From positions 124,001 to 188,000 of the IMG/VR virus record IMGVR_UViG_3300044646_001937: a DNA stretch of 64,000 bases, one strand, 5' to 3'. Within the stretch, counting starts at the first letter, position 1. Each line of letters opens with the position of its first letter. This document shows, one piece after another, positions 1 to 36,747 of this stretch. The notes under the pieces were generated by a model, which was given only the letters and a program-made list of their open reading frames with translations, searched no databases and had not been told where the DNA came from. The position numbers and the translations under genes are program-made.

Positions 1-2
1 GC

Positions 3-1232
3 GGGTATGGCTCCAAGCAATTTGCAAGAGCGCTAATGCCTCTACAGGTAGTAGAGGCAGACTGCGAAACAATGAACGGTATCAGTGTTTCTGTAGACGA
101 CAAAGAATCAGCAGGGTCCTATCTAGCCAAAGGAGTGTTAGACTATAATAGGAATAACGAAGTGACATTAAAAATGCTCAACGATCTTAGAAATAAGAAA
201 GTTGAGAAGATTGTTATTCGTACACCCATGACATGTCAGTCTAACAAAAAACATCACTCAGGTGGTTTGTGTCAGATGTGTGTAGGTAAAAGAGAAAAGG
301 GAATGGCAGCAATGGACAGCTATGTAGGTCTGGTGGCAGGTACGGCTGTAGCGGAACCATTAACAGAAAGCGCGATGAAGGCCAGACATTCAGGAGGCGC
401 AGCCACGTCACTAGGAGGACAATCAGGCTTTAAGCTAATCAATCAGCTGGCCAACGTACCTAAGACATTTGTAGGCAGAGCCCCCCTAGCTCAAGAGGAC
501 GGATTTGTTACTAAAGTAGAGAAAGCTGACGCTGGAGGTTACTTTATAACCGTGAATAATGAAGAGCATTATATTGGGATTGATCAGGAACCTAAAGTAC
601 AGCAAGGAGACAGAGTAGAACAGGGACAGGTATTAAGTACAGGTCTTGTAGATCCTAGAGAGGTTGTAAAATATAGAGGAATTGGAGACGGGCGTAAGTA
701 TTATATGGAGGCAATGAAGAAAGCATTCGACGACAGCAGTCTTCCTGTAAATCGCAGAAATTTTGAGCTGATTGCGAAAGCTGCTGTAGATCATGTCAAA
801 ATCACAGACCCCGAAGGTATAGGTAATTATCTTCCAGATCAGGTGGTGTCATACTCAGCTATTGAGAAAGACTATAACCCCAGAAGTAACTCTAAGATGC
901 TTAGGATAGATATGGCCTATGGTAAATATATGGAGAAACCTGAGCTTCACTACACCATTGGCACCAGAGTTACCTCCGCCGTAATCAGAGATCTCAAAGA
1001 ACATGAGATTGAATCTGTACTGGTTAACGATCAACCCCCCAACTTTGAACCAGTAATGGTACGTCTGGTGGACGTACCAGAGCATCATGAAGACTGGATG
1101 CATGTATTAAACAGCACCAACCTCGCAAAAAGGTTTGTAAATATGGTCAACAGAGGATCTACATCAGACACAAAAGGCCCTAGCCCTATACCTGGGTTAG
1201 CTATGGGTGTTGGGTTTGGACAGAAAGATTAA
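3..1232 (+). CDS. rpoC: Phage multisubunit RNA polymerase beta-prime-like subunit, C-terminal part (5' end outside the window)
   Basis: The frame is open from position 3 (GYGSKQFARALMPLQVVEADCET, cf. bridge-helix end SGYLTRRLVDV..V.E.DCGT). It has the Zn site IRTPMTC..GLCQMCVG, the trigger loop VGLVAGTAVAEPLTESAMKARHSGGAA (cf. [27 protein letters not shown]), the jaw-like KVQQGDRVEQGQVLSTG, and RNFELIAKA (cf. KHIEVIVRQ). Confidence 0.9.
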   Translation, partial: GYGSKQFARALMPLQVVEADCETMNGISVSVDDKESAGSYLAKGVLDYNRNNEVTLKMLNDLRNKKVEKIVIRTPMTCQSNKKHHSGGLCQMCVGKREKGMAAMDSYVGLVAGTAVAEPLTESAMKARHSGGAATSLGGQSGFKLINQLANVPKTFVGRAPLAQEDGFVTKVEKADAGGYFITVNNEEHYIGIDQEPKVQQGDRVEQGQVLSTGLVDPREVVKYRGIGDGRKYYMEAMKKAFDDSSLPVNRRNFELIAKAAVDHVKITDPEGIGNYLPDQVVSYSAIEKDYNPRSNSKMLRIDMAYGKYMEKPELHYTIGTRVTSAVIRDLKEHEIESVLVNDQPPNFEPVMVRLVDVPEHHEDWMHVLNSTNLAKRFVNMVNRGSTSDTKGPSPIPGLAMGVGFGQKD

Positions 1233-21227: not shown

Positions 21228-21256
21228 TTGCGATAACTCTACAAATTAGCTATAAT
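21228..21256 (+). promoter_or_regulatory. sigma70-type promoter TTGCGA-N17-TATAAT for the tail tube
   Basis: Perfect -10 box with a 17-nt spacer. Confidence 0.7.
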
Positions 21257-21729: not shown

Positions 21730-21768
21730 TTTGAGCCTCTGTCTTATATATTAAGGCAGAGGCTCAAA
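21730..21768 (+). terminator. 17-bp RNA hairpin after the tube gene (terminator, stabiliser or processing site)
   Basis: TTTGAGCCTCTGTCTTA-tatat-TAAGGCAGAGGCTCAAA, with one U.G pair and no clear U tail. Confidence 0.6.
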
Positions 21769-21802
21769 CTATTTATGCTGTGAGCTATAAAATAAAACAC
21801 AC

Positions 21803-24298
21803 ATGAGTATCAGGCAAAACCCATTACCTTCAGATCATCCAAATTTTAATACTCCGTCTAAAGTATTTGTAGGTGAAATCATTACATCATGCTCAGGCTC
21901 GCACGCCATCACAGTAGCAAGATCTAAGCACGGCGGAGCAAAATCAGCCGACGGCGGATACATGATGCAGGGAACATTGGCCACGTCAGTAATGGCTTCT
22001 ATATTTGGATTTAGAGAGTCAGCACCTCCACAACCAGGAACACAGGTTGTATGCTTAGAAGAGTCTGCAAGTCATTGCTATATTTTAGGTATGCTACCCA
22101 AGCAAAACCCCAACCTGGACAATATGCCCAATAGGGCCGCTCTTGGGGCAGGTAACGCCCTAGAAGACAGCGCCAATAGGAAGGGACATGAAAAATATAC
22201 ACCAAGGATATATGACAACAGAAGACCTACAGACGCGGTAGATGGTGAGCATGTTGTCAGTAATGAGTTTGGGGTTTTGCTTGGGCTGTATCAGCAGTTA
22301 GCTAATCTGAAAGCATCAGAGCTAGCGCAAGTGCAGTGCTTCCTTTTGGATGATCTTGTGCGTGTGATCAGTCATAATTTTCAACACTATACAGCTCTTG
22401 GCGAATATAATATATATCATGACGGTAAAGCATTAATGGCCGAATTTGGAGCCACACACAAGACCTCAGAAGCATATGGAAAACCCGCTGTAAACTCAGA
22501 CTCCTCTTCTGCAACATTCACGAAAACAGGAACGCATACTGCAGATGATGAAAATGACTTTTATAAAATCTCAGGAGATGAGCGAATAAAAGCAATTGAG
22601 CGCTTTAAATGGTTTCTTGGTACTGTGGGAGATTTTTTGCATGTATTCATGGTTAGACCTGATCCGCAAGAATCAAGAGTTTTAGATCCGACTAAAAAAC
22701 CAAACAAACCAGACACAGGGTTATGTGATTTGCATATAGGTACTGACGGAGGACTGCATTTACGTAGTGTAAAAGAAGTATTTATTGAAAAAACTAATTG
22801 GATTAGGGTACCGCTGAGAGTGGCTGCTCCGGATGATGAAGCTGGAGACGACGCAGCTAAAATAAAGTATAAAGAGAAAGAGCTTTTTAAGTTTGATAAT
22901 GAAATTATTGCAACACATAACCCTATTAGGTACGCGTTACAGATAAGGGACTATGTAGCTTATGTAAACGAGAAGCTTAATTATGAGAATTTTAAAAAAC
23001 ATGAAAAAGATTTTTATGTAAACGATGAATTAAGCAAAGAAGAAGCACTTAATAGGATAGGTAAAGTAGATCAAGAAACTTCTCTTAAGCTGAGCGATTA
23101 TAAACTTAGAACTGCTGGAATATATCTAATGCCAAATGGAGGCATAACAATTAGAGATGCATGGAATTCAGCAATAATTATGGAGGGTGGTAACGTTTAT
23201 ATACAGCCAGCAAAAGATCTTATAACTCAACCTTTAAGAAGTATGGTTGTAAAGGCAGGCAAAAACATAAACATGTCTTGCCGCAAACATATAGATCTCT
23301 CCTCAAGCGATGAAGGAATGAGAATCAAGACACACAAGTCTCAATATCTATATAGTCATGAAGGAGGCGTTATTCTTGAAGCAAATGCTGAAAAAGACGT
23401 AGCCTATGCGCCTATACCCTCAAAAGGCGCCTTACAGCAAGTTGGAGGAATCGTACTTAAATCTAGTTTGGGTATATACAACTATGCTGAAAAAAACATA
23501 GTGAACTTTGCTAAAGGAAAAATGCTGCTCCAGTCCTTAGACAATATGGATATCACTGCAGGTTTTGAGGATGATAAAGCCAACAAAACCGCTAATAAGC
23601 CCATCAAACCCAAAAAAAATAACTCTAAGGAATCTTTAGCTACAGACAAAAAAGATGAATCTTCAACTACAAACAAAAAAGCCGCAACTCGAAAAAAACA
23701 AGCAAGCATCACAGTATATAGCCAGAACAATATGACAGTTCTGGCGGACAAGTCTATGCTCCTACACTCAAAGGAATTAGCCACCATGGTATCAGACAAG
23801 CAAATGATATTGGCCGGCGCAGCCGCAACACTGCTTGGAGAGAAAGGCGATTCAATTTCTACTGAAGGCGTTATAGAAACTGAAAAGATGGTAAAAGATA
23901 TATTTAAAAAACCAAGAGAGATTAAAAAAGAATTACTCAAACAAACAGTATTTGAAAAAGCCACTAATTTTGAAGCACTAGAGTTTAAGTTTCTTAACTC
24001 TAAAGAATACGGTAGTGACATAGACAAAGAAAAAGACCCGTTTCCTATTACATTAGCGCAGCAGGATAATTTGTTGACAAACTTATATAAACTAGAAGAA
24101 TGGAAAGAGGAAAAGATTAACGAGTCATATCCGTATCCTGGTAAAGATTTGTTTGAAAAGTTTTATTATATTACTCAAAAACCTAACAATTTACAGAAGC
24201 ATCCCATTGATAAAGATTCACATAGTAAAGCAGACCCGCAGAATATTCCCGCAACTATAACCCTGACATCACTAAGCAAATACAAAGTATTAAAATAA
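21803..24298 (+). CDS. Baseplate spike/hub protein, gp5/VgrG-like
   Basis: OB-fold-like PPQPGTQVVCL near the N-terminus. Short periodic beta-helix-like repeats (GGITIRD..IIMEGGNVYIQPAKDL..VKAGKNINMS). Confidence 0.6.
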   Translation: MSIRQNPLPSDHPNFNTPSKVFVGEIITSCSGSHAITVARSKHGGAKSADGGYMMQGTLATSVMASIFGFRESAPPQPGTQVVCLEESASHCYILGMLPKQNPNLDNMPNRAALGAGNALEDSANRKGHEKYTPRIYDNRRPTDAVDGEHVVSNEFGVLLGLYQQLANLKASELAQVQCFLLDDLVRVISHNFQHYTALGEYNIYHDGKALMAEFGATHKTSEAYGKPAVNSDSSSATFTKTGTHTADDENDFYKISGDERIKAIERFKWFLGTVGDFLHVFMVRPDPQESRVLDPTKKPNKPDTGLCDLHIGTDGGLHLRSVKEVFIEKTNWIRVPLRVAAPDDEAGDDAAKIKYKEKELFKFDNEIIATHNPIRYALQIRDYVAYVNEKLNYENFKKHEKDFYVNDELSKEEALNRIGKVDQETSLKLSDYKLRTAGIYLMPNGGITIRDAWNSAIIMEGGNVYIQPAKDLITQPLRSMVVKAGKNINMSCRKHIDLSSSDEGMRIKTHKSQYLYSHEGGVILEANAEKDVAYAPIPSKGALQQVGGIVLKSSLGIYNYAEKNIVNFAKGKMLLQSLDNMDITAGFEDDKANKTANKPIKPKKNNSKESLATDKKDESSTTNKKAATRKKQASITVYSQNNMTVLADKSMLLHSKELATMVSDKQMILAGAAATLLGEKGDSISTEGVIETEKMVKDIFKKPREIKKELLKQTVFEKATNFEALEFKFLNSKEYGSDIDKEKDPFPITLAQQDNLLTNLYKLEEWKEEKINESYPYPGKDLFEKFYYITQKPNNLQKHPIDKDSHSKADPQNIPATITLTSLSKYKVLK

Positions 24299-25154: not shown

Positions 25155-28100
25155 ATGGCTGACCCAGGCAATTTTGACCCTTATGAGATGTACTCAAATT
25201 TTTCCCATATGGGGAGAAATTTTGGCAATCCATTGCTTAATTCTCTAGCCATGATGGCGTTTGGGCATAATTATATGCCAGACACAGAGGAGAGTGGTCA
25301 GGACATGCATGAGGCTTTATTGCAGAGAGAAAGATCTGCAAATTTCATGCAGCTGCAGAGATCATCCTTTGCAAACAATGCACTTTTCCAGAAAATGGGT
25401 ATATCTGGAAATATGGCAACAAGTGTCATGGCTGGTGTTATGTCATCACCAGATAGCGCAGCATCTAAAATGATGTCAGGCGTTTTGGGCGGAAATCCCA
25501 TGGCCGCATCTGCAAAAATATACTCAGGACTCACAGGCGCAAACGTGATGGGGGCCTTTGGCAGGACAGGGAACATCACAGCTGAAGAAACCGAAAGCGT
25601 GATGCAGTCTCTAGCCAAAAACTTCTACACCTCTCAAAACTATGAAGGACCTGAAGGCGTAAAAGAAGACATTAAAAAGAAAAGCAGACAATATATTACT
25701 GATCTAGCTGAACGAAAAGGAGGCTCTGGGCTTATTGAGTTAAAGGAAAAGGCTGGTATAGATTTAACTGACGGGAAAGGAGGTCTGGCCAAAGATTATA
25801 AAGAAAAAATTGCGAAGTTCGATATCACTGAAGGAGATGATGAGCGGGCTGTAAGACACTCTGCAAGTGATTTAAGAACTAAAAGCAACACACTTTCAGA
25901 TAAAATAAGCAAGGCAACTAAAGAGGGTGATGAGAAGCTAAAAAAGAAACTTGAAGAATCTATAGAAAAAGATCTCAAGGATAACTTTAAAATGGCTAAG
26001 GATGAAATTGATAAGCAGTACAAAAAGAATGGAAAGCTGGATTTATCAAAACTAGAAAAAGATGCAAAAGATTCTTTTTCGCAAACATCCCCGCTTGAAG
26101 GTATGCGTAAAGAGGCGGAAGCGGCCAAAACAGCTGGATCTAGAATTACTGGATTTGATTTTGCGAAATCTAGAGGGTTTAAACTAGAAGACATTACCTC
26201 AGGTTTTACAAAAGCCGCAGAACTCAGAATGCTTGGAGATAGTAGAAGCATGACTCCGACCCAGGCAATGGACAAGTTTTCCAAAAACGCAGGAGGGGCA
26301 ATGGATGCAGCTAGAGGTATATTTGGAAACAGGTCAGGCGGAGAATTAATGGAAAAGATTTCGCAATTTGCAGGATCAAATGTGGATTTAAGCACAAAAG
26401 GAGGCAGCGCCGAGATTGAGGGACTATTACGAAAAACAAATGCTACAGCTAGGGTAGCCGGAGTCAGTATAAAAACAATGTTGGCTATCATTGATTCTGC
26501 AAAACAATTGGCCGCAAATAATCCAGCACTGCAACATATGAGCAGCTCAGCAGCTGTAGAAACGTCACTACAGGCAGTCAAGGGTGCTGCTCAGATGGGT
26601 AAGATGATGACTGGTACGGAATTCAGGCAGGCAGGAGGAACACAGGGGCTATCCTCACAAGCAATCCAAGAGTCGCAAGCTTTTTCACAGTCTGAGTTAG
26701 GACAGAGTACATACGCCTTATTAGCGGCATCAAAAGGTACAGATGCTGAAGACTTCGTTAAGGACCTGGTTAAGAATGGTAAACTCACTGCCCAATATTT
26801 AAATAATGGAGGTATTGCTGAGATCGCCAAGAAAATGGGTAAATCGGAAATGGAAGTTATAAATCTTTCGCAGAACAGGCTGCTGTCAGAGTCGGGCATG
26901 AAAGATGACGACAATACTAAAATTGTTTCTGAAGGCGCAGGAAAGACAGGCGTAGAATCTATGTTTGACTATCTGGCTAAATATGGAAAAGGATACTCCA
27001 AAGAAGATTTAGAAAAAAAATATAAAGAAGAGTATTTGGCTAAAGGTAAATCTGTGAGTGATTTTAAAAGAGAAGTGTTGATGCCTAAGCTTGGAAGAAC
27101 TAAACAAGGTATGGAGCTGGCGCGTACATACGATTTCAGTATCACCAAACACATGCTCGAGTCTGCTATGACTCCTGAGGAAAAAGCAGCAATGGACAAA
27201 GAAATCAAGCAGGAGACAGCTAAATCTGCGGAAGTAGCCAAACAGAATGCAGGTAGAAATGCTCCAATGCTTACGCAAATTATGCAGGGTATAGCTGCTG
27301 GAGATAAAAAATTTGATAAGTATGATATAGATGCAGCCAGGGAAGAAATGTCGAAAATTTTTGCAACAGGAGGCAAAAAGCGAGACGATGTGACTGCCGC
27401 AGCAATGCTTAAAGCTGAAGACGCTGGCGAGGTATTAGTGAAGGAGATTTCAAGCGACCAAAGAATGCCTATGAAGAGATCCGCCCAGCTACTGAGTATA
27501 GTGATGGCAGGCAAAAAGCGTGAACTTGAAAGTCAGGGAGACACCGAAGAGGCCGCAAAGCTGGACACTAATATTACAGAACAAGATATTTCAGAGCTTA
27601 GAAAACAAGGATCTGCAGGTAAGTATAATAACAACAACCAAGCCATGAGTGCTCTTGAGCGCCTTGAAGCTAAACCTGACAACGAATTAACTCAACCTGA
27701 GCGTGAAGAAAAAACAAAACTGCAGAGATTGCGTAAAACAGGGATATTGCAAAACGCCGAAGCTTATGAACATCTAAAAAAGGGCGACACCTCTGCAGCC
27801 ATTAGGTCTGTTGGTCAAGCGGCTGTAGAAGATAATCAAAAAGCAAAAGCCAAAGACGATCTTGTTCCTAAAAATCAATCACCTCAATTACAGGCTTCTA
27901 TGAAAGAAGCTGCAGAGGCTGGTAAAAAAATAATAGATCAGACCACCAAAAAGGGAGGCATTCTAAGTTTTGAGGAAGAAAAAATAGCTGAAGATGTTAA
28001 TAAAGTAACTGAAGCGAACAGAAAGTCACTGATTGAGGCTGGTAGAGTAGATGAAGCCAGAGGACTTGGTAAAGTAACCAACCAGGAGCTGGAAGACCTA

Positions 28101-28766
28101 ACTAAACGCGGCAAAGATGTTCTGGGCGGCATGACTGCTGTGGAGGCGGAAAATGAGTTAGAAAAACTAGAGCACGACGACGCAAAAGGTAAGTTGGACG
28201 AAGCATCTAAAGAAAAATTAAAATTGCTGAGAACAACCAGAAAGATGGGAGGTTTCTCAAGTCAAAAGGCCTTTGAGGGAATGACTTCAGGCAAACGTGA
28301 GCAGGTGGCGATGGGTAGCCTAGAGGCATCAAAAGCTATTCAAAACAAAGTTGCTTTTGATAGTCAAAAAGCAAACATAGACGAAAAGCTATCAAAAGAT
28401 TTAGATAAGTACGAACAAAGCAAAGGCATCAGCGCCGAAGGAAAGGCAGCAATAGCTGAAGCTCGACAGGCCTATACTGTAAATGGCAAGATTGACTTTG
28501 ACAAGATGCGCAAAGATCAGGCTTCTGGAGAAGGGATTTTTAAAGGAAATCAAAAGAAATTTGAAGCTCTTGGAGGGTTGCTCCAAGGATCATCAAAACA
28601 AATTGAAGAAGCCAAAGCGCAAACCATCGCTAAAAACGAGCAGACTGGAGCTGACCCCATGAAACAGGCTCTGGACGCTTTAAAAGAAATGATAGGTTTG
28701 CTAAAAAGCGGCGGAGGTATAGGTGACAAATTAAGCGATTTAGCAAAAGCAATAGCACACATATAA
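25155..28766 (+). CDS. Tape measure protein (1203 aa)
   Basis: Long, helical and K/A/E/G-rich. Follows the G/GT pair and has an internal duplication. Confidence 0.8.
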   Translation: MADPGNFDPYEMYSNFSHMGRNFGNPLLNSLAMMAFGHNYMPDTEESGQDMHEALLQRERSANFMQLQRSSFANNALFQKMGISGNMATSVMAGVMSSPDSAASKMMSGVLGGNPMAASAKIYSGLTGANVMGAFGRTGNITAEETESVMQSLAKNFYTSQNYEGPEGVKEDIKKKSRQYITDLAERKGGSGLIELKEKAGIDLTDGKGGLAKDYKEKIAKFDITEGDDERAVRHSASDLRTKSNTLSDKISKATKEGDEKLKKKLEESIEKDLKDNFKMAKDEIDKQYKKNGKLDLSKLEKDAKDSFSQTSPLEGMRKEAEAAKTAGSRITGFDFAKSRGFKLEDITSGFTKAAELRMLGDSRSMTPTQAMDKFSKNAGGAMDAARGIFGNRSGGELMEKISQFAGSNVDLSTKGGSAEIEGLLRKTNATARVAGVSIKTMLAIIDSAKQLAANNPALQHMSSSAAVETSLQAVKGAAQMGKMMTGTEFRQAGGTQGLSSQAIQESQAFSQSELGQSTYALLAASKGTDAEDFVKDLVKNGKLTAQYLNNGGIAEIAKKMGKSEMEVINLSQNRLLSESGMKDDDNTKIVSEGAGKTGVESMFDYLAKYGKGYSKEDLEKKYKEEYLAKGKSVSDFKREVLMPKLGRTKQGMELARTYDFSITKHMLESAMTPEEKAAMDKEIKQETAKSAEVAKQNAGRNAPMLTQIMQGIAAGDKKFDKYDIDAAREEMSKIFATGGKKRDDVTAAAMLKAEDAGEVLVKEISSDQRMPMKRSAQLLSIVMAGKKRELESQGDTEEAAKLDTNITEQDISELRKQGSAGKYNNNNQAMSALERLEAKPDNELTQPEREEKTKLQRLRKTGILQNAEAYEHLKKGDTSAAIRSVGQAAVEDNQKAKAKDDLVPKNQSPQLQASMKEAAEAGKKIIDQTTKKGGILSFEEEKIAEDVNKVTEANRKSLIEAGRVDEARGLGKVTNQELEDLTKRGKDVLGGMTAVEAENELEKLEHDDAKGKLDEASKEKLKLLRTTRKMGGFSSQKAFEGMTSGKREQVAMGSLEASKAIQNKVAFDSQKANIDEKLSKDLDKYEQSKGISAEGKAAIAEARQAYTVNGKIDFDKMRKDQASGEGIFKGNQKKFEALGGLLQGSSKQIEEAKAQTIAKNEQTGADPMKQALDALKEMIGLLKSGGGIGDKLSDLAKAIAHI

Positions 28767-29213: not shown

Positions 29214-30176
29214 ATGTTTAATCATTTCGCAACACTGCTTAGCAACATTGATTTACTGCAACTAGAACCTACAGCAAATAGGTTTTTACTAGCCGCAGGA
29301 AAAGACAAGCTACTAGATGTAACTAATAACAGTGTTCTTAAACTGACAGATACTTATACAACTTTAAAAATAGATAGAATATATTCAGATCTATTAAACA
29401 GAAATTATCACAGGATCGAACTGCCTACACAGCTAGAGGGGGTTTATAATCTTCTTTTTCCTGAAGGCAGTTCTGCATATCATAAGCAGTTTCTATTGTA
29501 CTGCTATTTACGTGTAATTTCAGGAACAGATAAAGCGGAGCATGTTAAAAACTATGACAATAGGATAACTTATAGTCTAAACGAAGTGTCGGAGTATTTT
29601 AAATTTAATAAACTCACAAGAACACTTTATAGTGATAGAGGTTTTGAGTTGCTTGTCTCAGGCAGCCTAAAGCCGCAGAATACTTTAACAAATTCATCCT
29701 CAGTGTTTATCATAAGCCAAGAGAAAGATACCTCTAACGTTTATGTCTATAACGCCACACAAAGAGAATATTACAAAGCAGGAAAAGCCTCCACAAACAA
29801 TCCGCAGGGCATGTCAACCGCTTTAGAGTTCAGCTCACTAGGTCAAACTACATCTAAACCTATAGGTCTAGGAGATACAGGACTAACCATAACTCTCACA
29901 GGAGATTTTAATAACCTTACTACAGGATTCACAAAGTCCAGTAATAAGCGCTGGTCATTCATCGCAGAAGCTCCTTTTGTATTCAGTCTTTCTGAAAAAA
30001 TGAATGACTTGAACTTAAAATATCGTTATATTGAGAGTATGTTTGAATACAATAGAAATGCCTGTAATTTAACGTATGAGAATATGTGGAACCAGCACTT
30101 CAATGATGCATATAAACTTACAGGATTACTTTTAGCCTATGTTGAAAGGGTGCATTTGTTATGGCAGGAGATGTAA
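29214..30176 (+). CDS. Hypothetical baseplate-module protein
   Basis: Packed ORF in the baseplate operon. Confidence 0.5.
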   Translation: MFNHFATLLSNIDLLQLEPTANRFLLAAGKDKLLDVTNNSVLKLTDTYTTLKIDRIYSDLLNRNYHRIELPTQLEGVYNLLFPEGSSAYHKQFLLYCYLRVISGTDKAEHVKNYDNRITYSLNEVSEYFKFNKLTRTLYSDRGFELLVSGSLKPQNTLTNSSSVFIISQEKDTSNVYVYNATQREYYKAGKASTNNPQGMSTALEFSSLGQTTSKPIGLGDTGLTITLTGDFNNLTTGFTKSSNKRWSFIAEAPFVFSLSEKMNDLNLKYRYIESMFEYNRNACNLTYENMWNQHFNDAYKLTGLLLAYVERVHLLWQEM

Positions 30177-31744
30177 AAATAAGTACAAGTATAGGTACAG
30201 CGATAGGAGCAACAATTGTGTATCCTATGGGAGGAATACCCTACGCCGCTGTCGACATTATACCGTCAGGAGGGATTAAAATATCTCAAGGAGGACTACC
30301 TGATATAGATTCTCAAAAACGCCAGGAGGCATCTGTGTCAGTGTCAGTGAAGTCAAATGGAGGCAGGGGAGGTAGTTTAAATTTTAAAGGAGTGATCGAC
30401 GGCATGAGTGTAAACAATATGGTCGGGCAGAGCTCGTACCAAGCAATTATTAAAAACGCCGGCGTATGTCTACTTGAAGCCACAACACTAATGCCTGGTC
30501 TCATTCCCTCAGGTATTAATGTTTACAAAATGCCCAACTTTGGGGCCACTCATAACTCACAAGGAGGAGACGACGACAATTTGGAACATTTTGTAGATAT
30601 GCAGGATGTAGATCTGAAAAAATCTCCAATAGAGGTTTACACAGAAATTCTTAAAAAAATATTACAAATGCAAGTCGATGGCTCGTGGGAGAAAAAAGTA
30701 GGGCTTGAAGAGATGGTTTCAGGAGGACAGCCTTTTGAAAAAATATTCAATGGTTCAGCCTACAAAAAAACAGCAACGAACGCATTAAAGTATATATCTA
30801 CCGTAGATTTAAGCGCAGTTACCTCAGGCGCAGCATCCAAGGTAGGCATGAGCGATGACGCACTGGTGACTAGTTTGATGAGAATTTTTAAACTAGGCCC
30901 CCAGGTAGTGCTTGAGAATTATCTAAACTTCTTAAGATTGTTAGGGTGTACAGTAATATTCAGTAACAGTAAAATGTATGTTGTACCGGAAAACTCTACA
31001 CTTAAACAAGGAGGAAAAGGAATAAACAGCGCTACTCCTAATGACTATAATGCTTATTCATATAACGATAATGGTTATAGAGATATAGGTAGCTGTATAG
31101 TACTGACAGATGGAAGTATGGGAGGATTCAACTTAGCTAGCAAGGGGTTTGATTCAGGCACAATAGGCTGCTTTGAAGACGCGAAAGTATCTAAAGCCGG
31201 AGGAACCCTCATAGTTTCAGCAAACCCATTCATGGCCGCATCAGCAAACGCGCCGGCAGCATCAGACAGTAAAAAAATAGCTCAAAAGATGGACAATCCA
31301 GGAGATCCGTTACTAAAATCTCCAGCTACCGCAGCCGAGCAGGGTAAGGCTCAATCAGGCGCAGCCGCACTAGCCAGCGGAATGAAAAATAGATTTAAGA
31401 AAGTCGGATCAGTGCTAGACAATTATGCACAGTCTGTACTATATCAGGCCAGATATGGAGACAGAACAGGCTCTGTGACTATGGAGTTTAATCCGAATTG
31501 GGTACCAGGAACAGGCGGCTCTATATTTATTAAGCAAACAAATACGTATATACATTTTAATGTAACCACTGTAACGCACATGATTAGTACTGCAGCGCCA
31601 ACCACCGGAACAGCCATAACAACAGTGAGCTTCAACTGTGGAAGAGTAGGTCAAAGTCCTGCAGGACTGGATAGCTATAAATATTTTGGATACGACAGCG
31701 GTAAGGAAAAAGGTATTCAAGGGTCATATATAGGAGATTCTTAA
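30161..31744 (+). CDS. Putative baseplate hub (gp27/gpD-like)
   Basis: Motifs FKGVIDG and GSVTMEFNPNWVPG..VTTVTHMI..TTVSF, typical of hub proteins. Confidence 0.55.
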   Translation: MAGDVKISTSIGTAIGATIVYPMGGIPYAAVDIIPSGGIKISQGGLPDIDSQKRQEASVSVSVKSNGGRGGSLNFKGVIDGMSVNNMVGQSSYQAIIKNAGVCLLEATTLMPGLIPSGINVYKMPNFGATHNSQGGDDDNLEHFVDMQDVDLKKSPIEVYTEILKKILQMQVDGSWEKKVGLEEMVSGGQPFEKIFNGSAYKKTATNALKYISTVDLSAVTSGAASKVGMSDDALVTSLMRIFKLGPQVVLENYLNFLRLLGCTVIFSNSKMYVVPENSTLKQGGKGINSATPNDYNAYSYNDNGYRDIGSCIVLTDGSMGGFNLASKGFDSGTIGCFEDAKVSKAGGTLIVSANPFMAASANAPAASDSKKIAQKMDNPGDPLLKSPATAAEQGKAQSGAAALASGMKNRFKKVGSVLDNYAQSVLYQARYGDRTGSVTMEFNPNWVPGTGGSIFIKQTNTYIHFNVTTVTHMISTAAPTTGTAITTVSFNCGRVGQSPAGLDSYKYFGYDSGKEKGIQGSYIGDS

Positions 31745-31746
31745 TT

Positions 31747-32379
31747 ATGAATGACGTAGAACAGATGATTAAGGACAACAAGAAGTTGATTGAACTGGAA
31801 GTGAGTAGATATGCTACTAACCTACCGAAGATAACTGTACAGCTAGAAGCCTATAAGCTAGCCAGAGAGGCAGCCAAAACATATAGCCCCGCCTCTGGAT
31901 TTAAATTTAGCACGCATCTAGTGAACAGTCTTAAAAAACTATCAAGACTTTCCACGCAATATGGTAACGTAGTGAGAATTCCTGAGAATACTCAGTTTGG
32001 TATAAATAAACTGCAGAAACTTGAAAAGGATCTGGAGCACACTCTAGGTAGAGCACCAACCACAGATGAGCTAAGCCATCACTCAGGAATGTCCATGAAC
32101 GCTATAGTTAATACGCTAGGCAGCAAAAAGATAAGCTCAGGTATATCCTCTCTTTTTGAAAGCCCTACACTGTTTGACAGTAACAATGACGAATGGGTGC
32201 ATTTCGTATATCACGATCTGAGCGACAAAGATAAATTAATTTTTGAACATAAGACAGGATTTGGTGGAAAGCCTGTGATGGACAATTCGTCACTGGCCAA
32301 GAAATTAAATTTGTCTACCAGTACTTTAAGTAATAGAATTAAGATGATAAATAATACATTAGCGAAAGGATGGAAATAA
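31747..32379 (+). CDS. Phage sigma70-family sigma factor (regions 2, 3 and 4)
   Basis: YSPASGFKFSTH (cf. FDPERGFKFSTY). Region 3: VRIP..INKL..LEHTLGRAPTTDELS. Region 4 HTH: LSDKDKLIF..LAKKLNLSTSTLSNRI. Confidence 0.85.
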   Translation: MNDVEQMIKDNKKLIELEVSRYATNLPKITVQLEAYKLAREAAKTYSPASGFKFSTHLVNSLKKLSRLSTQYGNVVRIPENTQFGINKLQKLEKDLEHTLGRAPTTDELSHHSGMSMNAIVNTLGSKKISSGISSLFESPTLFDSNNDEWVHFVYHDLSDKDKLIFEHKTGFGGKPVMDNSSLAKKLNLSTSTLSNRIKMINNTLAKGWK

Positions 32380-32796
32380 ATGGCAGTTTTCTCAAAACTT
32401 AAAAGACTTGTAGAGAAGTTCGATACTTGGATGCAAAAAATCCCCACAGCCCGTTTGGGTAATGATGTGGAGGGCAGAGCTTGGTTTGCTAAGAGTATAG
32501 AATATACAAACCCTTTTAAGCTTCAAAACCTGCGAAATATTACAGACAGGGAAGATCTAAATAGTGATTATTCTGCTAAATATGACGTAAAAGACCCTAA
32601 AGGCAGAAAAGGCATAAGTGGTATTAAAGTTGAAATCTCTGCGCTGTACAGTTTTCAAAAATGTTTTGTGCAGAGGTATAAAGGTAGAATGCACTACTAC
32701 AGGGATGACCTCTCACAAAAGGGAGCTAGAAATATGGGTACAGTAAACCAGTCTCTAGGTATACTTGAAGAGTTTAAAAATAACCTTAAAAATTAA
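32380..32796 (+). CDS. Hypothetical basic protein
   Basis: Abuts the sigma stop codon (TAA-ATG). Confidence 0.55.
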   Translation: MAVFSKLKRLVEKFDTWMQKIPTARLGNDVEGRAWFAKSIEYTNPFKLQNLRNITDREDLNSDYSAKYDVKDPKGRKGISGIKVEISALYSFQKCFVQRYKGRMHYYRDDLSQKGARNMGTVNQSLGILEEFKNNLKN

Positions 32797-32798
32797 CC

Positions 32799-33278
32799 AT
32801 GCCGATCAGCTCTATCACCTCAAATTACATAGACAGAAAAAAAGACATTAGTATATTTCAATATCCTAATGCTCTAGCTATTGGAGAGCAGACAGTGGCA
32901 CCTAAGTTTGGTAAAATTTCCAGATACTGTACTGGAGTACAAAAGCTGATCCAAAATTATGCTGTGATGCTTCTCACCAATATAGGTTCTCAACCAAATT
33001 ACCCCACCTTTGGCACAAATTTAATGGGCAAACTTAATGCAGGAATTTCACCTGTAGACAAACTTGCAGCATCTCAGCTTTTTGAATTAGCTAGTTATGA
33101 GACAGTATCAGCGTTAAAAAGCTACCAGCATTATCGCACAGACATTCCAGACGATGAGCTCATTGTTGACGCCACATTGACTGATATAGCTCTCCAGGGA
33201 GGCTTTGCAGCTTTCGAAGTAACAATAACAACCCAAGCCGGTGATGCGGTTGAGTTCGTAGTCCCATTACCTAAATAA
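32799..33278 (+). CDS. Baseplate wedge/sheath initiator, gp25-like
   Basis: GVQKLIQ..LLTNIGS..YPTFGTNL matches the gp25/W pattern. Directly before the J-like gene. Confidence 0.7.
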   Translation: MPISSITSNYIDRKKDISIFQYPNALAIGEQTVAPKFGKISRYCTGVQKLIQNYAVMLLTNIGSQPNYPTFGTNLMGKLNAGISPVDKLAASQLFELASYETVSALKSYQHYRTDIPDDELIVDATLTDIALQGGFAAFEVTITTQAGDAVEFVVPLPK

Positions 33279-33283
33279 ATATT

Positions 33284-34906
33284 ATGGCCGAAAACATAGA
33301 AGCAACAGTAGAGCGCCTCACAGCCTTCATAGAGCAGAACTACGCCGACGTAGAAGCAGGACCAGGGTCAGTCATCAGCGAGCTACTAATAAAGTTGGCT
33401 GCTACATTACACAATGAGCAGTACAATCTTATTACACAACTAGAACAGGGAAATACATTTTTAAAAGTAGCCGAATCGACTGAAGACACATATTCCCCGA
33501 TAATTGACCAGCTGGCGTCAAACTATAACACAGCCAGAAACGCAGGTATTAAGGTCAAAGGCAGAATCAAGGTAACTATTGACGATGATAATGAATACAA
33601 TTTTACAGCACGTCAGATCCAGTTTATTCAACCCAGCTTAAACCTTAGATATTTCCTGACAACAGATGCTCGTGTAAGATTATCTCCATCTCCAACACTA
33701 GCTGAAACGCAGTTGTATCGCGATAACGGTCTTTACTATTTTATATTAGATGTAGAGGCAGAGTATGCAGGCGAGCAGTATCAGGCGTCTTCAGGAACTT
33801 TGTTTACTGTCGGAGAAAACAATTTTATCGATGGTTTTGTAAAAGCAGAAGCTTATGGTAATTTCTCATCAGGTTTGTCACCAGAAACAGATAAAGAGTT
33901 GGTAGCTAAAATAAAATATAATTTAGGTAACACCAGGTTTGATTCGCCTGCAGGTATAGCAAACAGGTTCAGCAGGGAATTTCCAGGCTTTCAATATCTC
34001 TCTGTATGTGGCGCAAACGATATAGAGATGACTAGGTCTAAACAAAACGCGCTAGGCATATCAACATTCGGTAAGGCTGACGTGTATGTAAGGTCAAGCA
34101 TTGGGCCGCAAGTAATGCACCTTAAGAAGCAGGCCACAAAAACTGCAGAAAACACATGGACTATTGATATGTTGAATCATGAAGTTCCAGGCTTTTACAA
34201 TATTGTTAGTATTATTCCTGATGTGGTAGACATGTCACTGGGTGGAACATTGCTACAGAAAACGCCTATAGCCTACAGTTACGCATACTATCCTGAAAAA
34301 AGAAATAACGAGTTGTATAGTGTCATAGATGCAAGGTTTACAAAATATCAAACAGCAACCGTCACACTTGATTATGCCGACCCTGGTAATGCAGAAATAG
34401 GAAGCAATGCTTATTTCTTACTGCAGGTTAACTATCAACCTAATATTGCGGAAATGCAAGACCTGCTATTGTCTGACACTGAAAGATTAGCTTGCGCAGA
34501 CTATCTTGTAAAAGCAGTGATTCCATGTATGGTTTCACTGAATATTCAGCTACTTAAGAAAAGACCAACAGACACGTTTGAGTCACTGAATATTCAGCAG
34601 CTTAAAAAAGATATTTTCTTATATATTAACACAATTCCATTTGGAGAAGAATTGCATGCATCTAGAATAGTAGATATATGTCATAATTACGACATCAGAC
34701 GAGTAGATCTACCGATAAGCATGAAGGGTGTCATCCTATGTCCAGACGGAACCAGCCTACCTATTTCAGGCAATGACGCGCTAACCATCCCAAATAATCT
34801 GGCTAAGGGGGTAACTCCAAAAACAACAGCTTATTTCATAGACTATTACAGAACAGAAAACGGGCAGATCAACCCTATTGATAACATAGGCTTAAATATT
34901 GTTTAA
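33284..34906 (+). CDS. Baseplate J-like wedge protein
   Basis: Motifs GPGSVISELL, IDQLASNY..R..G, ETDKELVAK and GKADVYV. Confidence 0.8.
   Translation: MAENIEATVERLTAFIEQNYADVEAGPGSVISELLIKLAATLHNEQYNLITQLEQGNTFLKVAESTEDTYSPIIDQLASNYNTARNAGIKVKGRIKVTIDDDNEYNFTARQIQFIQPSLNLRYFLTTDARVRLSPSPTLAETQLYRDNGLYYFILDVEAEYAGEQYQASSGTLFTVGENNFIDGFVKAEAYGNFSSGLSPETDKELVAKIKYNLGNTRFDSPAGIANRFSREFPGFQYLSVCGANDIEMTRSKQNALGISTFGKADVYVRSSIGPQVMHLKKQATKTAENTWTIDMLNHEVPGFYNIVSIIPDVVDMSLGGTLLQKTPIAYSYAYYPEKRNNELYSVIDARFTKYQTATVTLDYADPGNAEIGSNAYFLLQVNYQPNIAEMQDLLLSDTERLACADYLVKAVIPCMVSLNIQLLKKRPTDTFESLNIQQLKKDIFLYINTIPFGEELHASRIVDICHNYDIRRVDLPISMKGVILCPDGTSLPISGNDALTIPNNLAKGVTPKTTAYFIDYYRTENGQINPIDNIGLNIV
34535..34598. 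repeat. Direct repeat TCACTGAATATTCAGC, two copies 48 bp apart, each containing the palindrome CTGAATATTCAG
   Basis: Copies at 34535-34550 and 34583-34598, encoding SLNIQ twice. Confidence 0.8.
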
Positions 34907-34907
34907 A

Positions 34908-36722
34908 ATGGATATTAAATTTTTATCTGAAGCGTATCCATCCAATGACCTCACTGACGGACAATATTTATACAGGTCTTTAGGTTCTTTTTGGACACAC
35001 ATATTTCAGGATAAAAAGGCACTGCAAGGCTACACACTAGGCCAAGCGGAAGAATTAACGCAGTCATATTTAAAGCTGGCTGAAATAATTAATACATACA
35101 GCGTCAAAAATATTCCATTGTACGCCAAAGAAAAATGGAAACCGCTGCTCATTAAAAAATCAGCAGCCAACAAAGCTTCTTTTAAGTTTGAAAATACTGG
35201 AGCAGTGTTTGGGGTACAACCGCAAGATGACCCATACTACGCTAATAGACTGTTTAGGTTCGGTTTTCCGAAAGAAACAGGAGATTCTGTTTACGGTTAT
35301 GAGGTAGGTAACAATATTAAAGACTTTGGACTGCTGGCTAACAGAGTAATAGCGCCGTCTTTAGTTTTATTACCTGGAGTCGACTTTACGTTAAGTAATG
35401 GTGTATTGTACTTTAACAAAGATATATTTAATTCAGATTATCTACCTAAATCAAAAATACTTGGAGAGTTTGGCAGCGTGGTACAATTCAAAGACGCATC
35501 AGGCGAGCTAGTTGATGATGAATTAATTATCCTATGGATGCACGATGCTAGTATAGATGTAGACTATCTATACAAAAACTTTGGGATACTTTTTGACTTT
35601 AGATTGAGTACATCTCAAAACTACAAAGATATACTTAAATCTTTTATGCAGCTTGCGGTAGACGGACCTTCAATCGAAGCAATCACACTAGCACTCTCCG
35701 CGTTCTGCGGGCTACCAACAGTTATAGAGCCTACTGAAACAGTTGAGGATATTTTTACAAACTCCAACCATACCCACAGGATTGTAGTCACAGACAAGCA
35801 GGTATACAGATTGCCCATAGATCAAGAACTAGCGAGAAATGTACAAGTAGGTAAAAAGATATACTTAGGACAATGCATTGGAGCTGGGCTTGAAGTCATA
35901 GATGCAGTCATAACACCTGACTGGTGGATAAATAGTATCAAAACAAAGAAGTTAGGTTTACCGGCCCACTTGTTTGCAGCTAATGTAAAACATCAACTGT
36001 TTTTTGAATCTGACGTTACCTTGATTACAAAAACAAATGGCGATATATATTTTCCTGTAACTGGAAACCCCAGGGACGTGCAGGCTTTTCAGGCATATAT
36101 TAACGAACCAGCAAACAAAACAATTATTTCCGAAAAGCTGGGGTTGCTCGATGACAACTCCACAGGATTATACAGCTCTCCTTTGGATTTTGTATTTTCA
36201 AATTTTTTAAAAAACAATACGCTTTTAATTAAGCTGTCGTTTCATTCCGACAAACAACTAAAATTGTTTTTTGATCTGCTGCCTACTATCAAGGATTATT
36301 TACCTGCGCATGTGTGCCTGCTTACATATGTCACCTTAACATTACAGAGCGAAATATTAGGAGGGCTTAATAATGCTCTAAGTATTTCTGATTACCCTAA
36401 TGAATATTTCAGTATGGATGGTTCGGATCCTTTCACAGGCAGTCGTCCAGGCAGCGTGGAAGAATCTGTATACTATAAAGATTATGCAAATAGGTTATTC
36501 TGTATATCTGTAGGACCATATAGGGACGGAAAGCCTTTACATGATGAAGATAACCTGGATACTATTATGATTGATAATGGTACCACAAAGAACACCAGCT
36601 TTTCAGGCATAAAATCAGGACTTTTAAGAACAGAAATACCTGAAATTGTGATACCTCCAGGCGATGCGGCTAGAGGGCCATCTACCAGAGAGGTGCAAAC
36701 TATCTTATTAATCGACTTTTAA
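34908..36722 (+). CDS. Baseplate wedge protein (gpI/gp7-like)
   Basis: Follows J. Motifs LYKNFG..YKDILK..GPSIEAI..L and IKDYLPAHV. ATG 34908 preferred over TTG 34899. Confidence 0.6.
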   Translation: MDIKFLSEAYPSNDLTDGQYLYRSLGSFWTHIFQDKKALQGYTLGQAEELTQSYLKLAEIINTYSVKNIPLYAKEKWKPLLIKKSAANKASFKFENTGAVFGVQPQDDPYYANRLFRFGFPKETGDSVYGYEVGNNIKDFGLLANRVIAPSLVLLPGVDFTLSNGVLYFNKDIFNSDYLPKSKILGEFGSVVQFKDASGELVDDELIILWMHDASIDVDYLYKNFGILFDFRLSTSQNYKDILKSFMQLAVDGPSIEAITLALSAFCGLPTVIEPTETVEDIFTNSNHTHRIVVTDKQVYRLPIDQELARNVQVGKKIYLGQCIGAGLEVIDAVITPDWWINSIKTKKLGLPAHLFAANVKHQLFFESDVTLITKTNGDIYFPVTGNPRDVQAFQAYINEPANKTIISEKLGLLDDNSTGLYSSPLDFVFSNFLKNNTLLIKLSFHSDKQLKLFFDLLPTIKDYLPAHVCLLTYVTLTLQSEILGGLNNALSISDYPNEYFSMDGSDPFTGSRPGSVEESVYYKDYANRLFCISVGPYRDGKPLHDEDNLDTIMIDNGTTKNTSFSGIKSGLLRTEIPEIVIPPGDAARGPSTREVQTILLIDF

Positions 36723-36747
36723 AATAAAACCAATATAATAATAATCT

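What the first reader, a model, noticed from the sequence alone, without database searches (positions are those of the whole stretch)
31747..32796. Sigma factor embedded in the baseplate operon and lacking the tryptophan dyad
Seen: a compact sigma with regions 2, 3 and 4 sits between the hub-like gene and the gp25-like gene, with gaps of 0-2 nt and no promoter of its own. Region 2.3 reads GFKFSTHLVNSLK where primary sigmas have GYKFSTYATWWIR, so the promoter-melting aromatics are lost. Inference: it is expressed late at baseplate stoichiometry. It may be packaged to partner the phage RNAP for the next infection, recognise pre-melted or modified-base promoters, act as a decoy for host core RNAP, or have been co-opted structurally. 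The coupled basic ORF 32380 may be its partner.
Basis: partly seen in the sequence, partly recalled or inferred. Interest (0 to 1): 0.72.

Follow-up and report, generated by a model that had tools for sequence, protein, structure and literature searches.

The report
Virion-type sigma for a phage RNA polymerase
A real sigma factor gene is fixed inside the tail-baseplate operon of a freshwater jumbo phage that also encodes its own multisubunit RNA polymerase; in a cultured relative both proteins are found in virions, so the sigma is probably injected with the polymerase to start the next infection.

Summary
ORF 31747-32379 is a 210-aa sigma-70-family protein (sigma2-sigma3-sigma4). It lies between a Mu gp44/VgrG-like hub and gp25-/gp6-like baseplate genes, with 0-2 nt gaps and no conserved promoter. 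Region 2.3 lacks Y430/W433/W434, but this is a conserved trait (T-H-x-x-N) of a large phage sigma family, not decay.

New context:
- The phage encodes its own split multisubunit RNAP. One piece is a fusion of the beta C-terminal half with the beta' N-terminal part.
- All 11 genomes checked with this sigma in this slot also carry that RNAP. They include cultured Vibrio phage D69 and Salmonella phage Arash.
- Published Arash virion mass spectrometry detected the sigma (Gp10) at about the same length-normalised level as the RNAP subunits.
- Co-folding places sigma region 2.1-2.2 on the phage beta' clamp helices (ipSAE 0.77, best control 0.03).

Best reading: a late-made, virion-packaged initiation factor of the phage's own RNAP. 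This contradicts the review-level rule that RNAP-encoding jumbo phages lack sigma homologs.

Not shown: packaging in this phage, the promoters recognised, any role for ORF 32380, and the host.

The parts
1..1232 (+). 3' part of the phage RNAP beta' C-terminal subunit gene (616 aa; it starts upstream of the window at genome 123382). The fusion gene for the beta C-terminal half plus the beta' N-terminal part (1001 aa) lies at genome 118825-121830, just upstream of the window.
   Evidence: Pfam RNA_pol_Rpb1_5 (E 5.6e-14) and Rpb1_3/4; PHROG RNAP hits. Fusion ORF: Rpb2_6 E 1.7e-46, Rpb1_2 E 2.1e-13.
21228..21256 (+). Promoter-like site TTGCGA-N17-TATAAT before ORF 21286-21708. This is a possible start of the long tail/baseplate transcription unit.
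   Evidence: Best-scoring site of the scan. The close relative G002 has TTGCCT-N17-TACAAT at the orthologous place.
21730..21768 (+). Strong intrinsic terminator hairpin (17 bp stem). It is the last one on the + strand before the sigma.
   Evidence: No further strong + strand terminator up to 40.4 kb.
21785..21793 (+). Candidate -10-like element CTATAAAAT, 9 nt before the ATG of ORF 21803. Support is weak.
   Evidence: Not clearly conserved in G002/G004.
21803..24298 (+). 831-aa tail protein, first gene after the terminator, with a weak VgrG C-terminal (DUF2345) signal.
   Evidence: Pfam DUF2345 E 6e-4, below the cut-off.
25155..28766 (+). 1203-aa tape-measure-like protein.
   Evidence: Size, composition and position. 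Conserved in relatives. No family hit was sought.
30161..31744 (+). Baseplate hub, similar to Mu gp44 / P2 gpD / VgrG. A conserved AGGAG ribosome-binding site for the sigma lies in its 3' end.
   Evidence: Atlas features and structure, TM up to 0.78 by target, Phage_GPD and Gp44-like families. AGGAG seen in the alignment.
31747..32379 (+). Sigma-70-family factor, 210 aa. Regions 2.1-2.4 span about residues 4-73, region 3 about 80-125, the disordered 3.2 linker 130-144, and the region 4 HTH about 148-209.
32380..32796 (+). Translationally coupled 138-aa basic (pI 9.7) all-helical protein of unknown role. It is conserved within the clade (mean column identity 61%).
   Evidence: No Pfam or PHROG hit.
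32799..33278 (+). gp25-like baseplate wedge protein (159 aa).
   Evidence: PHROG 975 at E 2e-4 and PHROG 43 at E 7e-3. Homolog in the distant locus L019.
33284..34906 (+). gp6 / P2 J-like baseplate wedge protein (540 aa).
   Evidence: PHROG 6 at E 2.3e-5. Homologs in D69 and in all relatives.
34899..36722 (+). 607-aa baseplate/tail protein, conserved out to D69, L018 and L019.
36712..36739 (+). Conserved internal promoter-like site T(C/A)GACT-N16/17-TATAAT, 8-10 nt before the p188 ATG. It served as the positive control showing that conserved promoters are detectable in this operon.
   Evidence: about 10 of 11 relatives.

Best explanation
ORF 31747-32379 encodes a bona fide sigma-70-family initiation factor (sigma2-sigma3-sigma4, no region 1.1). 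It most likely serves the phage's own split multisubunit RNA polymerase, not the host core, or not only the host core. The gene has no promoter of its own and is transcribed as part of the long late tail/baseplate operon. The protein is made together with virion parts, packaged into particles along with the phage RNAP, and delivered with the DNA, so that a ready holoenzyme can start phage transcription in the next cell. Newly made sigma and RNAP could also feed late transcription.

Shown here: sigma identity, gene order and its deep conservation, the phage RNAP, and the co-occurrence of the two.

Shown only in a relative and in the literature: presence of sigma and RNAP in virions.

Inferred: pairing with the phage RNAP (co-fold plus co-occurrence), late timing, injection, and which promoters are read. 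TATAAT-type elements dominate the genome.
For: (1) Sigma family membership.

(2) Phage RNAP: the beta C-half / beta' N-part fusion has Rpb2_6 at E 1.7e-46 and Rpb1_2 at E 2e-13. The beta' C part has Rpb1_5 at E 5.6e-14. A beta N fragment matches Rpb2_3. The catalytic DSDGD triad and a clamp-helix-like segment are conserved.

(3) Co-occurrence in 11 of 11 genomes: G000, five IMG/VR relatives, D69/D181/D148 and Arash, and a 226-kb mis-binned contig.

(4) Synteny hub - sigma - small ORF - gp25-like - gp6-like holds in 11 IMG/VR loci, L054, L018/L019 at 34-36% identity, D69 and Arash. The sigma is the best-conserved protein of the block: 53-78% against 25-43% for the hub.

(5) Arash virion LC-MS/MS (PMC10585845): Gp10 sigma had 100% coverage, 24 unique peptides and 467 spectra. 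RNAP Gp206 had the most spectra of any protein (3516) and Gp216 had 1210. Length-normalised values are 2.00, 2.31 and 2.00 spectra per residue. In Arash the RNAP gene directly follows the portal gene.

(6) Co-fold of the sigma with the phage beta' N part: ipSAE 0.77, best of 3 controls 0.03. That mark was reached by 58 of 80 solved complexes and 2 of 110 mismatched pairs. The interface comprises sigma residues 24-40 (region 2.1-2.2) and the beta' coiled coil.

(7) No own promoter: with the positive control.
Against: Packaging is not shown for this phage. The Arash preparation yielded 116 of 272 proteins, including ribonucleotide reductases and a dNMP kinase, and no CsCl step is mentioned. The authors themselves allow carry-over of abundant infected-cell proteins.

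The co-fold reproduces a contact known from solved bacterial holoenzymes, so it may reflect memory of those structures. It does not discriminate phage core from host core.

Promoters seen upstream of structural genes look like ordinary sigma70 promoters, which a host holoenzyme could read in Salmonella or Vibrio hosts.

No transcriptome was available. A second, ECF-type sigma in the genome complicates any one-sigma model.
Confidence: 0.55

Rival explanations
1. A conventional phage late sigma. The protein binds the host core RNAP and redirects it to phage middle or late promoters, as T4 gp55 or SPO1 gp28/gp34 do. Its place in a late operon gives positive feedback, and its detection in Arash particles is carry-over.
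For: This is the textbook role of phage sigmas. Reviews state that jumbo-phage sigmas act on host core. Sigma70-like -35/-10 and extended -10 elements lie upstream of structural genes. The Arash virion preparation looks impure.
Against: A sigma needed for late transcription but encoded only inside a late operon, with no conserved promoter of its own, has a bootstrap problem. It co-occurs strictly with a phage RNAP (11 of 11). In Arash it is as abundant per residue as the RNAP subunits and more abundant than obvious contaminants (2.0 against 0.6 for dNMP kinase). The co-fold fits the phage beta'.
Confidence: 0.2
2. The sigma is the promoter-specificity subunit of the phage RNAP but works only inside the infected cell and is not packaged or injected. 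Early genes are read by host RNAP or with the ECF-type sigma. The gene's position in the baseplate operon is a historical accident that became fixed.
For: Pairing with the phage RNAP is supported, while packaging rests on one non-gradient proteome of a distant relative. The genome has a second sigma in the non-structural region.
Against: In Arash, RNAP beta is the most-detected virion protein and the sigma is near-equimolar with it. RNAP genes sit in the structural module, next to the portal gene in Arash and directly upstream of the structural genes here. The position inside the baseplate core has been kept across Vibrio, Salmonella and freshwater phages.
Confidence: 0.17
3. The protein has been co-opted. 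It could be a structural baseplate or tail-lumen component with a sigma fold, or an injected decoy that ties up host core RNAP without initiating, because the melting aromatics are gone.
For: It sits in the slot where Mu-like tails carry the spike gene. Y430, W433 and W434 are replaced. It is present in Arash particles.
Against: All three sigma domains, the 3.2 linker and the C-terminal HTH are kept. The replacement motif T-H-x-x-N and the R-x-P-E segment are conserved across the family, which argues for a working DNA-recognition surface. Many non-primary sigmas initiate without the Trp dyad (general knowledge, not tested here). It co-occurs with a phage RNAP.
Confidence: 0.06

Closest known systems
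Salmonella phage Arash Gp10 ('RNA polymerase sigma factor RpoS'), with RNAP Gp206/Gp216 (BMC Microbiol 2023;23:297, PMC10585845)
   Same: Same sigma family: BLASTP E 5e-17, 31% identity over regions 2-3, with the same T-H-x-x-N motif. Same slot between a large hub-position protein and the gp25-/gp6-like genes. Same beta / beta' N-part fusion RNAP (98% coverage, E 2e-122). Sigma and RNAP were both detected in virions.
   Different: Arash infects Salmonella. Its beta subunit is whole and fused to the beta' N part (1525 aa), whereas here beta is split. The ORF after its sigma is not detectably homologous to ORF 32380. The paper only lists the protein and gives no analysis of synteny, family or mechanism.
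phiKZ gp68 and AR9 gp226, the fifth subunits of jumbo-phage non-virion RNAPs
   Same: A phage-encoded factor that gives promoter specificity to a phage-encoded split multisubunit RNAP. phiKZ-type phages also package a virion RNAP.
   Different: gp68 and gp226 have no detectable sequence similarity to sigma. Reviews state that these RNAPs have no sigma homolog and that no sigma occurs in RNAP-encoding ('group 1') jumbo phages. Here the factor is recognisable by Pfam and PDB sequence searches. Only one RNAP set was found in the genome.
Bacterial group 3 sigma factors (SigF/SigB/SigG, FliA/WhiG)
   Same: Three-domain sigma2-sigma3-sigma4 architecture of about 210-260 aa without region 1.1. The best NCBIfam matches include SigBFG and FliA_WhiG. 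No Trp dyad (general knowledge).
   Different: All scores lie far below family cut-offs, for example SigBFG at 28.8 against 234 bits. The region 2.3 motif is family-specific. The gene is phage-borne and sits in a baseplate operon.
Phage sigmas that redirect host RNAP (T4 gp55, SPO1 gp28/gp33-34, sigmas of 'group 2' jumbo phages)
   Same: A phage-encoded member of the sigma superfamily that controls a temporal class of phage genes.
   Different: Those phages have no RNAP of their own, and to my knowledge their sigma genes are not embedded in the baseplate core. This comparison was not tested by sequence here.
Virion RNAPs of N4 and crAss-like phages
   Same: A transcription enzyme is packaged and injected to read early genes.
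   Different: Those are single-polypeptide enzymes without a sigma (listing, plus general knowledge).

Membership tests
Sigma-70 family | sigma2 domain (regions 2.1-2.4) | tested here: met
   phmmer aligns residues 9-124 to SigB 112-229 (E 5.8e-6). Foldseek matches sigmaA/sigmaS chains (E 3e-8). The Pfam Sigma70_r2 model itself gave no hit on this ORF.
Sigma-70 family | sigma3 domain (region 3.0-3.1) | tested here: met
   Pfam Sigma70_r3 scores 30.0 bits against a gathering cut-off of 25.3.
Sigma-70 family | sigma4 helix-turn-helix (region 4.2) | tested here: met
   Only sub-threshold HTH hits at residues 178-207, and Sigma70_r4 gave no hit. However, the model has C-terminal helices 148-209 and aligns to full sigma chains over about 220 columns. 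The relative P0135 hits region-4 models.
Sigma-70 family | Binding of region 2.2 to the beta' clamp helices of a multisubunit RNAP | tested here: met
   In silico only. Co-fold with the phage beta' N part gave ipSAE 0.77 against a best control of 0.03 (mark reached by 58 of 80 solved and 2 of 110 mismatched pairs). The interface is sigma 24-40 with the coiled coil. The result may reflect memory of solved holoenzymes.
Sigma-70 family | Promoter-specific initiation activity | not testable with these tools
   Needs in vitro transcription.
Group 1 (primary) sigma | Regions 1.1/1.2 and non-conserved region N-terminal to region 2 | tested here: not met
   The protein starts at region 2.1, about 10 residues from its N-terminus.
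Group 1 (primary) sigma | Melting aromatics Y430, W433, W434 | tested here: not met
   H57, N60 and S61 occupy these positions. The family consensus is T-H-x-x-N.
Group 3 sigma subfamilies (SigBFG, FliA/WhiG) | Score above the curated NCBIfam cut-off | tested here: not met
   SigBFG scores 28.8 against 234 bits and FliA_WhiG 20 against 190 bits. The architecture is alike but this is not a member.
Virion-packaged phage RNAP systems | Phage-encoded RNAP | tested here: met
   Rpb2_6, Rpb1_1/2/3/5 and Rpb2_3 domains on three ORFs.
Virion-packaged phage RNAP systems | RNAP and its factor present in purified virions | not testable with these tools
   Reported for the relative Arash (PMC10585845), with caveats about purity.
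Virion-packaged phage RNAP systems | Host-RNAP-independent early transcription | not testable with these tools
   No transcriptome or inhibitor data exist. RNA runs do not hold the phage.
phiKZ gp68 / AR9 gp226 type specificity subunits | No sequence similarity to sigma; recognised only by structure | tested here: not met
   This protein is recognised by Pfam, PHROG and PDB sequence searches. gp68 and gp226 themselves were not compared.

The most novel reading that the evidence does not exclude
This clade runs a self-contained, single-RNAP transcription system. A canonical sigma and a split multisubunit RNAP, both encoded in late structural operons, are co-packaged and injected as a holoenzyme that primes an autocatalytic loop, largely independent of host RNAP. 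The T-H-x-x-N region 2.3 would be a distinct way of engaging TATAAT-type -10 elements. The clade would also be the missing link between bacterial sigma/core enzymes and the sigma-less phiKZ/AR9 RNAPs.
Probability: 0.3. Interest if true: 0.85.

Novelty: new variant of a known kind. Interest (0 to 1): 0.72.

Why it matters
Current reviews divide large phages in two. Those with their own multisubunit RNAP are said to have no sigma homolog. Those with sigma factors are said to have no RNAP and to borrow the host core. This clade has both.

The sigma gene is locked into the baseplate gene string across freshwater, Vibrio and Salmonella phages, and proteomics of one member places sigma and RNAP together in particles.

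If confirmed, this would be the first virion-delivered RNAP holoenzyme built on a recognisable sigma. It would offer a tractable system for three questions, because Arash grows on S. Typhimurium ATCC 14028 and D69 on Vibrio:
- how a sigma without the Trp dyad opens promoters;
- how phage RNAPs lost or replaced sigma;
- how proteins are selected for packaging.

Tried and rejected
- Transcript evidence. No public RNA run holds this phage. Two 'RNA' runs found through related proteins gave only scraps of about 250 nt from relatives' sigma genes and were flagged as probably DNA. This was uninformative.
- Internal promoter. A TATAAATA at 31674-31681 looked like a T4-type late promoter, but relatives read GATAAATTT there, which is explained by D-K-F coding. 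Rejected.
- Late-promoter motif (G/C)TATAAA(A/T). Enrichment in one genome is too weak to use, at 8 intergenic sites against 3 expected.
- ORF 32380. It has no Pfam or PHROG hit, no Atlas feature hit, no Foldseek match (best E 0.96), and no profile similarity to Arash gp11 (probability 1.5%). Its partnership with the sigma was not tested, because the single co-fold job went to the RNAP question.
- Host. ECF-sigma affinities hint at Bacteroidota. The only genome-contig hit is a mis-binned phage contig in a 'Ca. Dependentiae' MAG. The host remains unknown.
- The 'moraphage' lineage (PMC12619734) is probably a different group, because its authors report no RNAP.
- Tool refusals and errors. Those rows were not resent, and the job was rebuilt from the window's genome and IMG/VR relatives. 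The search for related loci with the wide alignment A2 had no conserved stretch to search with.
- Megablast of the region against deposited phages found nothing.
Full report
**1. Observation**

The window lies in a 204,454-bp IMG/VR virus record, at genome positions 124001-188000. The 127-nt 'terminal repeat' is probably an assembly overlap.

- hub-like ORF 30161-31744, followed by a 2-nt gap;
- sigma ORF 31747-32379, followed by a 0-nt gap;
- ORF 32380-32796, followed by a 2-nt gap;
- gp25-like ORF 32799-33278;
- gp6-like ORF 33284-34906.

The 210-aa protein is a sigma-70-family member.
- Pfam Sigma70_r3 scores 30.0 bits against a cut-off of 25.3, and PHROG 351 gives E 2e-11.
- phmmer against PDB chains aligns residues 9-124 with regions 2.1-3.1 of SigB/SigA.
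- An AlphaFold model (pLDDT 83.7) shows three helical domains joined by a disordered segment at 130-144, as expected of a 3.2 linker. It aligns over about 220 columns with sigmaA/sigmaS chains from holoenzyme structures.

Region 2.3 reads GFKFSTHLVNSLKK against GFKFSTYATWWIRQ.

The 527-aa neighbour resembles Mu gp44 / P2 gpD / VgrG hubs by language-model features and by structure. The 159-aa and 540-aa ORFs give weak baseplate-wedge PHROG hits.

**2. The gene has no promoter of its own**

- Sigma70-type sites between 20.5 and 40.4 kb are no more frequent than in shuffles (59 against 49.8 +/- 6.3).
- The only strong + strand terminator is at 21730-21768. The unit that contains the sigma therefore starts near 21.2-21.8 kb and runs on without gaps larger than 10 nt.
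- A TATAAATA 65 nt upstream of the sigma is explained by coding conservation and is absent from relatives.
- No promoter-like site is shared within 800 nt upstream of the sigma in 11 relatives.
- As a positive control, a T(C/A)GACT-N16/17-TATAAT element 8-10 nt before the p188 start (window 36712-36739) is kept in about 10 of 11 relatives.
- What is conserved in front of the sigma is an AGGAG ribosome-binding site.

**3. The missing tryptophans are a family trait**

The sigma belongs to a large family:
- 281 clusters at 90% identity, found by the word-indexed search;
- 1751 representatives at 50% identity with E <= 1e-3, and 642 with E <= 1e-10.

Across about 140 representatives the region 2.3 consensus is YDPxKGxxLxTHxxNxLxxLxR, and virtually none has a WW dyad. 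Nearly invariant positions include R67 and E80, which flank the R-I-P segment at the 2.4/3.0 boundary.

NCBIfam places the protein nearest the RpoD C-terminal, SigB/F/G and FliA/WhiG models, but far below every cut-off. Its architecture is therefore group-3-like, in a phage-specific family. The replaced aromatics look like a conserved alternative, not decay. From general knowledge, group 3 sigmas such as SigF and FliA also lack the dyad. I did not test that here.

**4. Synteny is deep**

In 11 IMG/VR relatives (sigma 53-78% identical) the order is invariant: TMP - p145 - p320 - hub - sigma - p138 - gp25-like - gp6-like - p607 - p188. The sigma is the best-conserved protein of the block, with the hub at 25-43% and the gp6-like protein at 43-65%.

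The same arrangement recurs in:
- metagenomic relatives at 34-36% sigma identity (L018 and L019);
- a 226-kb contig mis-binned into a 'Ca. Dependentiae' MAG;
- cultured Vibrio phage D69;
- cultured Salmonella phage Arash.

The slot after the sigma always holds one ORF, but its sequence is not conserved between subclades. It is 138 aa here, 129 aa in Arash with no profile similarity, and an M23 peptidase in L019.

**5. The phage has its own multisubunit RNAP**

- Just upstream of the window, a 1001-aa ORF (genome 118825-121830) joins a beta-type Rpb2_6 domain (E 1.7e-46) to beta'-type Rpb1_1 and Rpb1_2 domains.
- A 616-aa ORF (genome 123382-125232, window 1-1232) carries Rpb1_3/4/5.
- A beta N-terminal fragment (Rpb2_3) lies at about 102 kb.
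- The catalytic aspartates (DSDGD) and a clamp-helix-like coiled coil (ADVNELYKD...) are conserved.

Only one RNAP set was found.

The three giant ORFs downstream of the baseplate carry Ig, fn3 and CarboxypepD_reg domains and are adhesins or fibres, not polymerases.

The genome also encodes a second, ECF-type sigma at 33.6 kb. Its best matches are Bacteroidota-specific ECF families.

**6. Sigma and RNAP go together**

The roughly 1000-aa beta/beta' fusion is present in all five IMG/VR relatives tested, in D69 and in the mis-binned contig.

In the phage database the only full-length matches to the fusion are Arash, D69, D181 and D148. These are the same four phages that give full-length matches to the family sigma. 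Co-occurrence is therefore 11 of 11.

In Arash the RNAP gene follows the portal gene with overlapping ORFs. Here the RNAP genes sit at the head of the structural module.

**7. Virion evidence from the literature**

The Arash paper (BMC Microbiol 2023;23:297; PMC10585845) reports LC-MS/MS of phage particles:
- RNAP Gp206 gave the most spectra of any protein (3516; 128 unique peptides);
- Gp216 (beta') gave 1210 spectra;
- the sigma Gp10 had 100% coverage, 24 unique peptides and 467 spectra;
- the next ORF, Gp11, gave 156 spectra.

Dividing by length gives 2.31, 2.00 and 2.00 spectra per residue for the two RNAP subunits and the sigma. The comparisons are 1.51 for the portal, 0.66-1.5 for the neighbouring baseplate proteins, and 0.59 for a dNMP kinase that is probably a contaminant.

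Caveats: 116 proteins were detected, no gradient purification is mentioned, and the authors allow for carry-over.

**8. Pairing test**

- The score was ipSAE 0.77 (three runs, 0.76-0.80), against 0.03 for the best of three controls.
- That mark was reached by 58 of 80 solved complexes and 2 of 110 mismatched pairs in the tool's calibration.
- The confident interface is sigma residues 24-40 (region 2.1-2.2), 71-79 and 122-134, against beta' fragment residues 160-207. That beta' stretch is the coiled coil.

This is the canonical holoenzyme contact. It shows likeness, not proof, and it cannot separate phage core from host core.

**9. Promoters**

A TGGTATAAT(ATATTGA) element is wholly intergenic in this genome (9 of 9 sites). 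It is largely intergenic in a close relative (7 of 10) and partly so in a distant one (4 of 8). It marks non-structural regions.

Orthologous footprinting shows sigma70-like -35/-10 or extended -10 elements before several structural genes, for example TTGCA(T/A)-N17-TAAA(C/A)T before the 941-aa gene in all three genomes.

Which enzyme reads which class cannot be told from sequence. If the host is a Bacteroidota, TATAAT-type promoters would not suit the host's primary sigma (general knowledge), but the host is not established.

**10. Interpretation**

The most economical model is that the sigma is the initiation factor of the phage RNAP, made late from the baseplate operon and packaged with the polymerase, so that an injected holoenzyme starts the next cycle (confidence about 0.55).

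This model also resolves the bootstrap problem of a sigma gene that has no promoter outside a late operon.

The rivals, in order of weight, are:
- a conventional late sigma for host core, with the virion signal due to carry-over (0.2);
- a phage-RNAP sigma that is not packaged (0.17);
- structural or decoy co-option (0.06).

**11. Novelty**

Reviews state that RNAP-encoding jumbo phages lack sigma homologs and that sigma-encoding ones lack RNAP. Literature searches found no description of a phage RNAP paired with a canonical sigma beyond the listing in the Arash proteome.

I rate this a new variant of a known kind, namely virion-delivered phage transcription machinery. It has cultured members on which every inference above can be tested.

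Noticed in passing
Genome 33629-34213 (L013:1462-2043), outside the window: A second, ECF-type sigma factor (194 aa). Sigma70_r4_2 scores above its cut-off, and the best NCBIfam matches are Bacteroidota-specific ECF families (GFO_1088/PG0214, Sig70_bacteroi1). This is a weak hint at the host and points to a two-sigma programme.
   Followed up: partly
Genome 117046-118444 (L024:3046-4444), outside the window: A 1.4-kb stretch without any ORF, between the divergent minus-strand cluster and the RNAP operon. It is about 1.09 kb in the close relative G002 but only 111 nt in G004. It could be a decayed mobile element, an intron or an RNA gene.
   Followed up: no
Genome 38876, 48649, 56726, 90953, 92778, 92839(-), 98504, 191269, 191780: The TGGTATAAT(ATATTGA) element occurs 9 times and every copy is intergenic. 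It is conserved in relatives (7 of 10 and 4 of 8 intergenic). It is a candidate promoter class for non-structural genes and is absent from the structural module.
   Followed up: partly
window 36712-36739: A conserved T(C/A)GACT-N16/17-TATAAT lies only 8-10 nt before the p188 start codon in about 10 of 11 relatives. This is an internal promoter that would give a nearly leaderless mRNA. Similar TGnTATAAT elements lie 8-25 nt before the starts of ORFs 5711 and 63293.
   Followed up: partly
window 40264-63242: Three giant ORFs of 2237, 1773 and 3616 aa follow the baseplate genes. The first two carry CarboxypepD_reg, He_PIG, fn3 and Ig-like domains and are probably fibres or adhesins. The 3616-aa ORF has no Pfam hit at all.
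   Followed up: partly
Proteins P0144 and P0271 (family members from metagenomes): Some members of this sigma family are 663-834 aa long and carry an N-terminal NUDIX / RNA pyrophosphohydrolase-like domain fused to the sigma. Others of 390-490 aa have unexplained N-terminal extensions.
   Followed up: no
L054 (RXKB01000001.1, 226,528 bp): A contig filed under a 'Candidatus Dependentiae' MAG has the full hub-sigma-baseplate synteny and its own 999-aa phage-type RNAP frame, separate from the MAG's real rpoB on another contig. It is most likely a mis-binned phage genome of this clade.
   Followed up: partly
L019:8754-9902: In a distant relative the slot directly after the sigma holds a 382-aa Peptidase_M23 protein instead of a small helical ORF. 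The slot is positionally conserved but its content varies.
   Followed up: no
window 21803-24298: The 831-aa first gene of the tail unit has a weak VgrG C-terminal (DUF2345) signal. It may be the spike that Mu-like tails encode between the hub and gp25, the slot occupied here by the sigma and ORF 32380.
   Followed up: no
Genome ends (1-127 and 204328-204454): The 'direct terminal repeat' is an exact 127-nt overlap, typical of assembler k-mer circularisation. The true genome ends and the first-injected end are unknown.
   Followed up: partly
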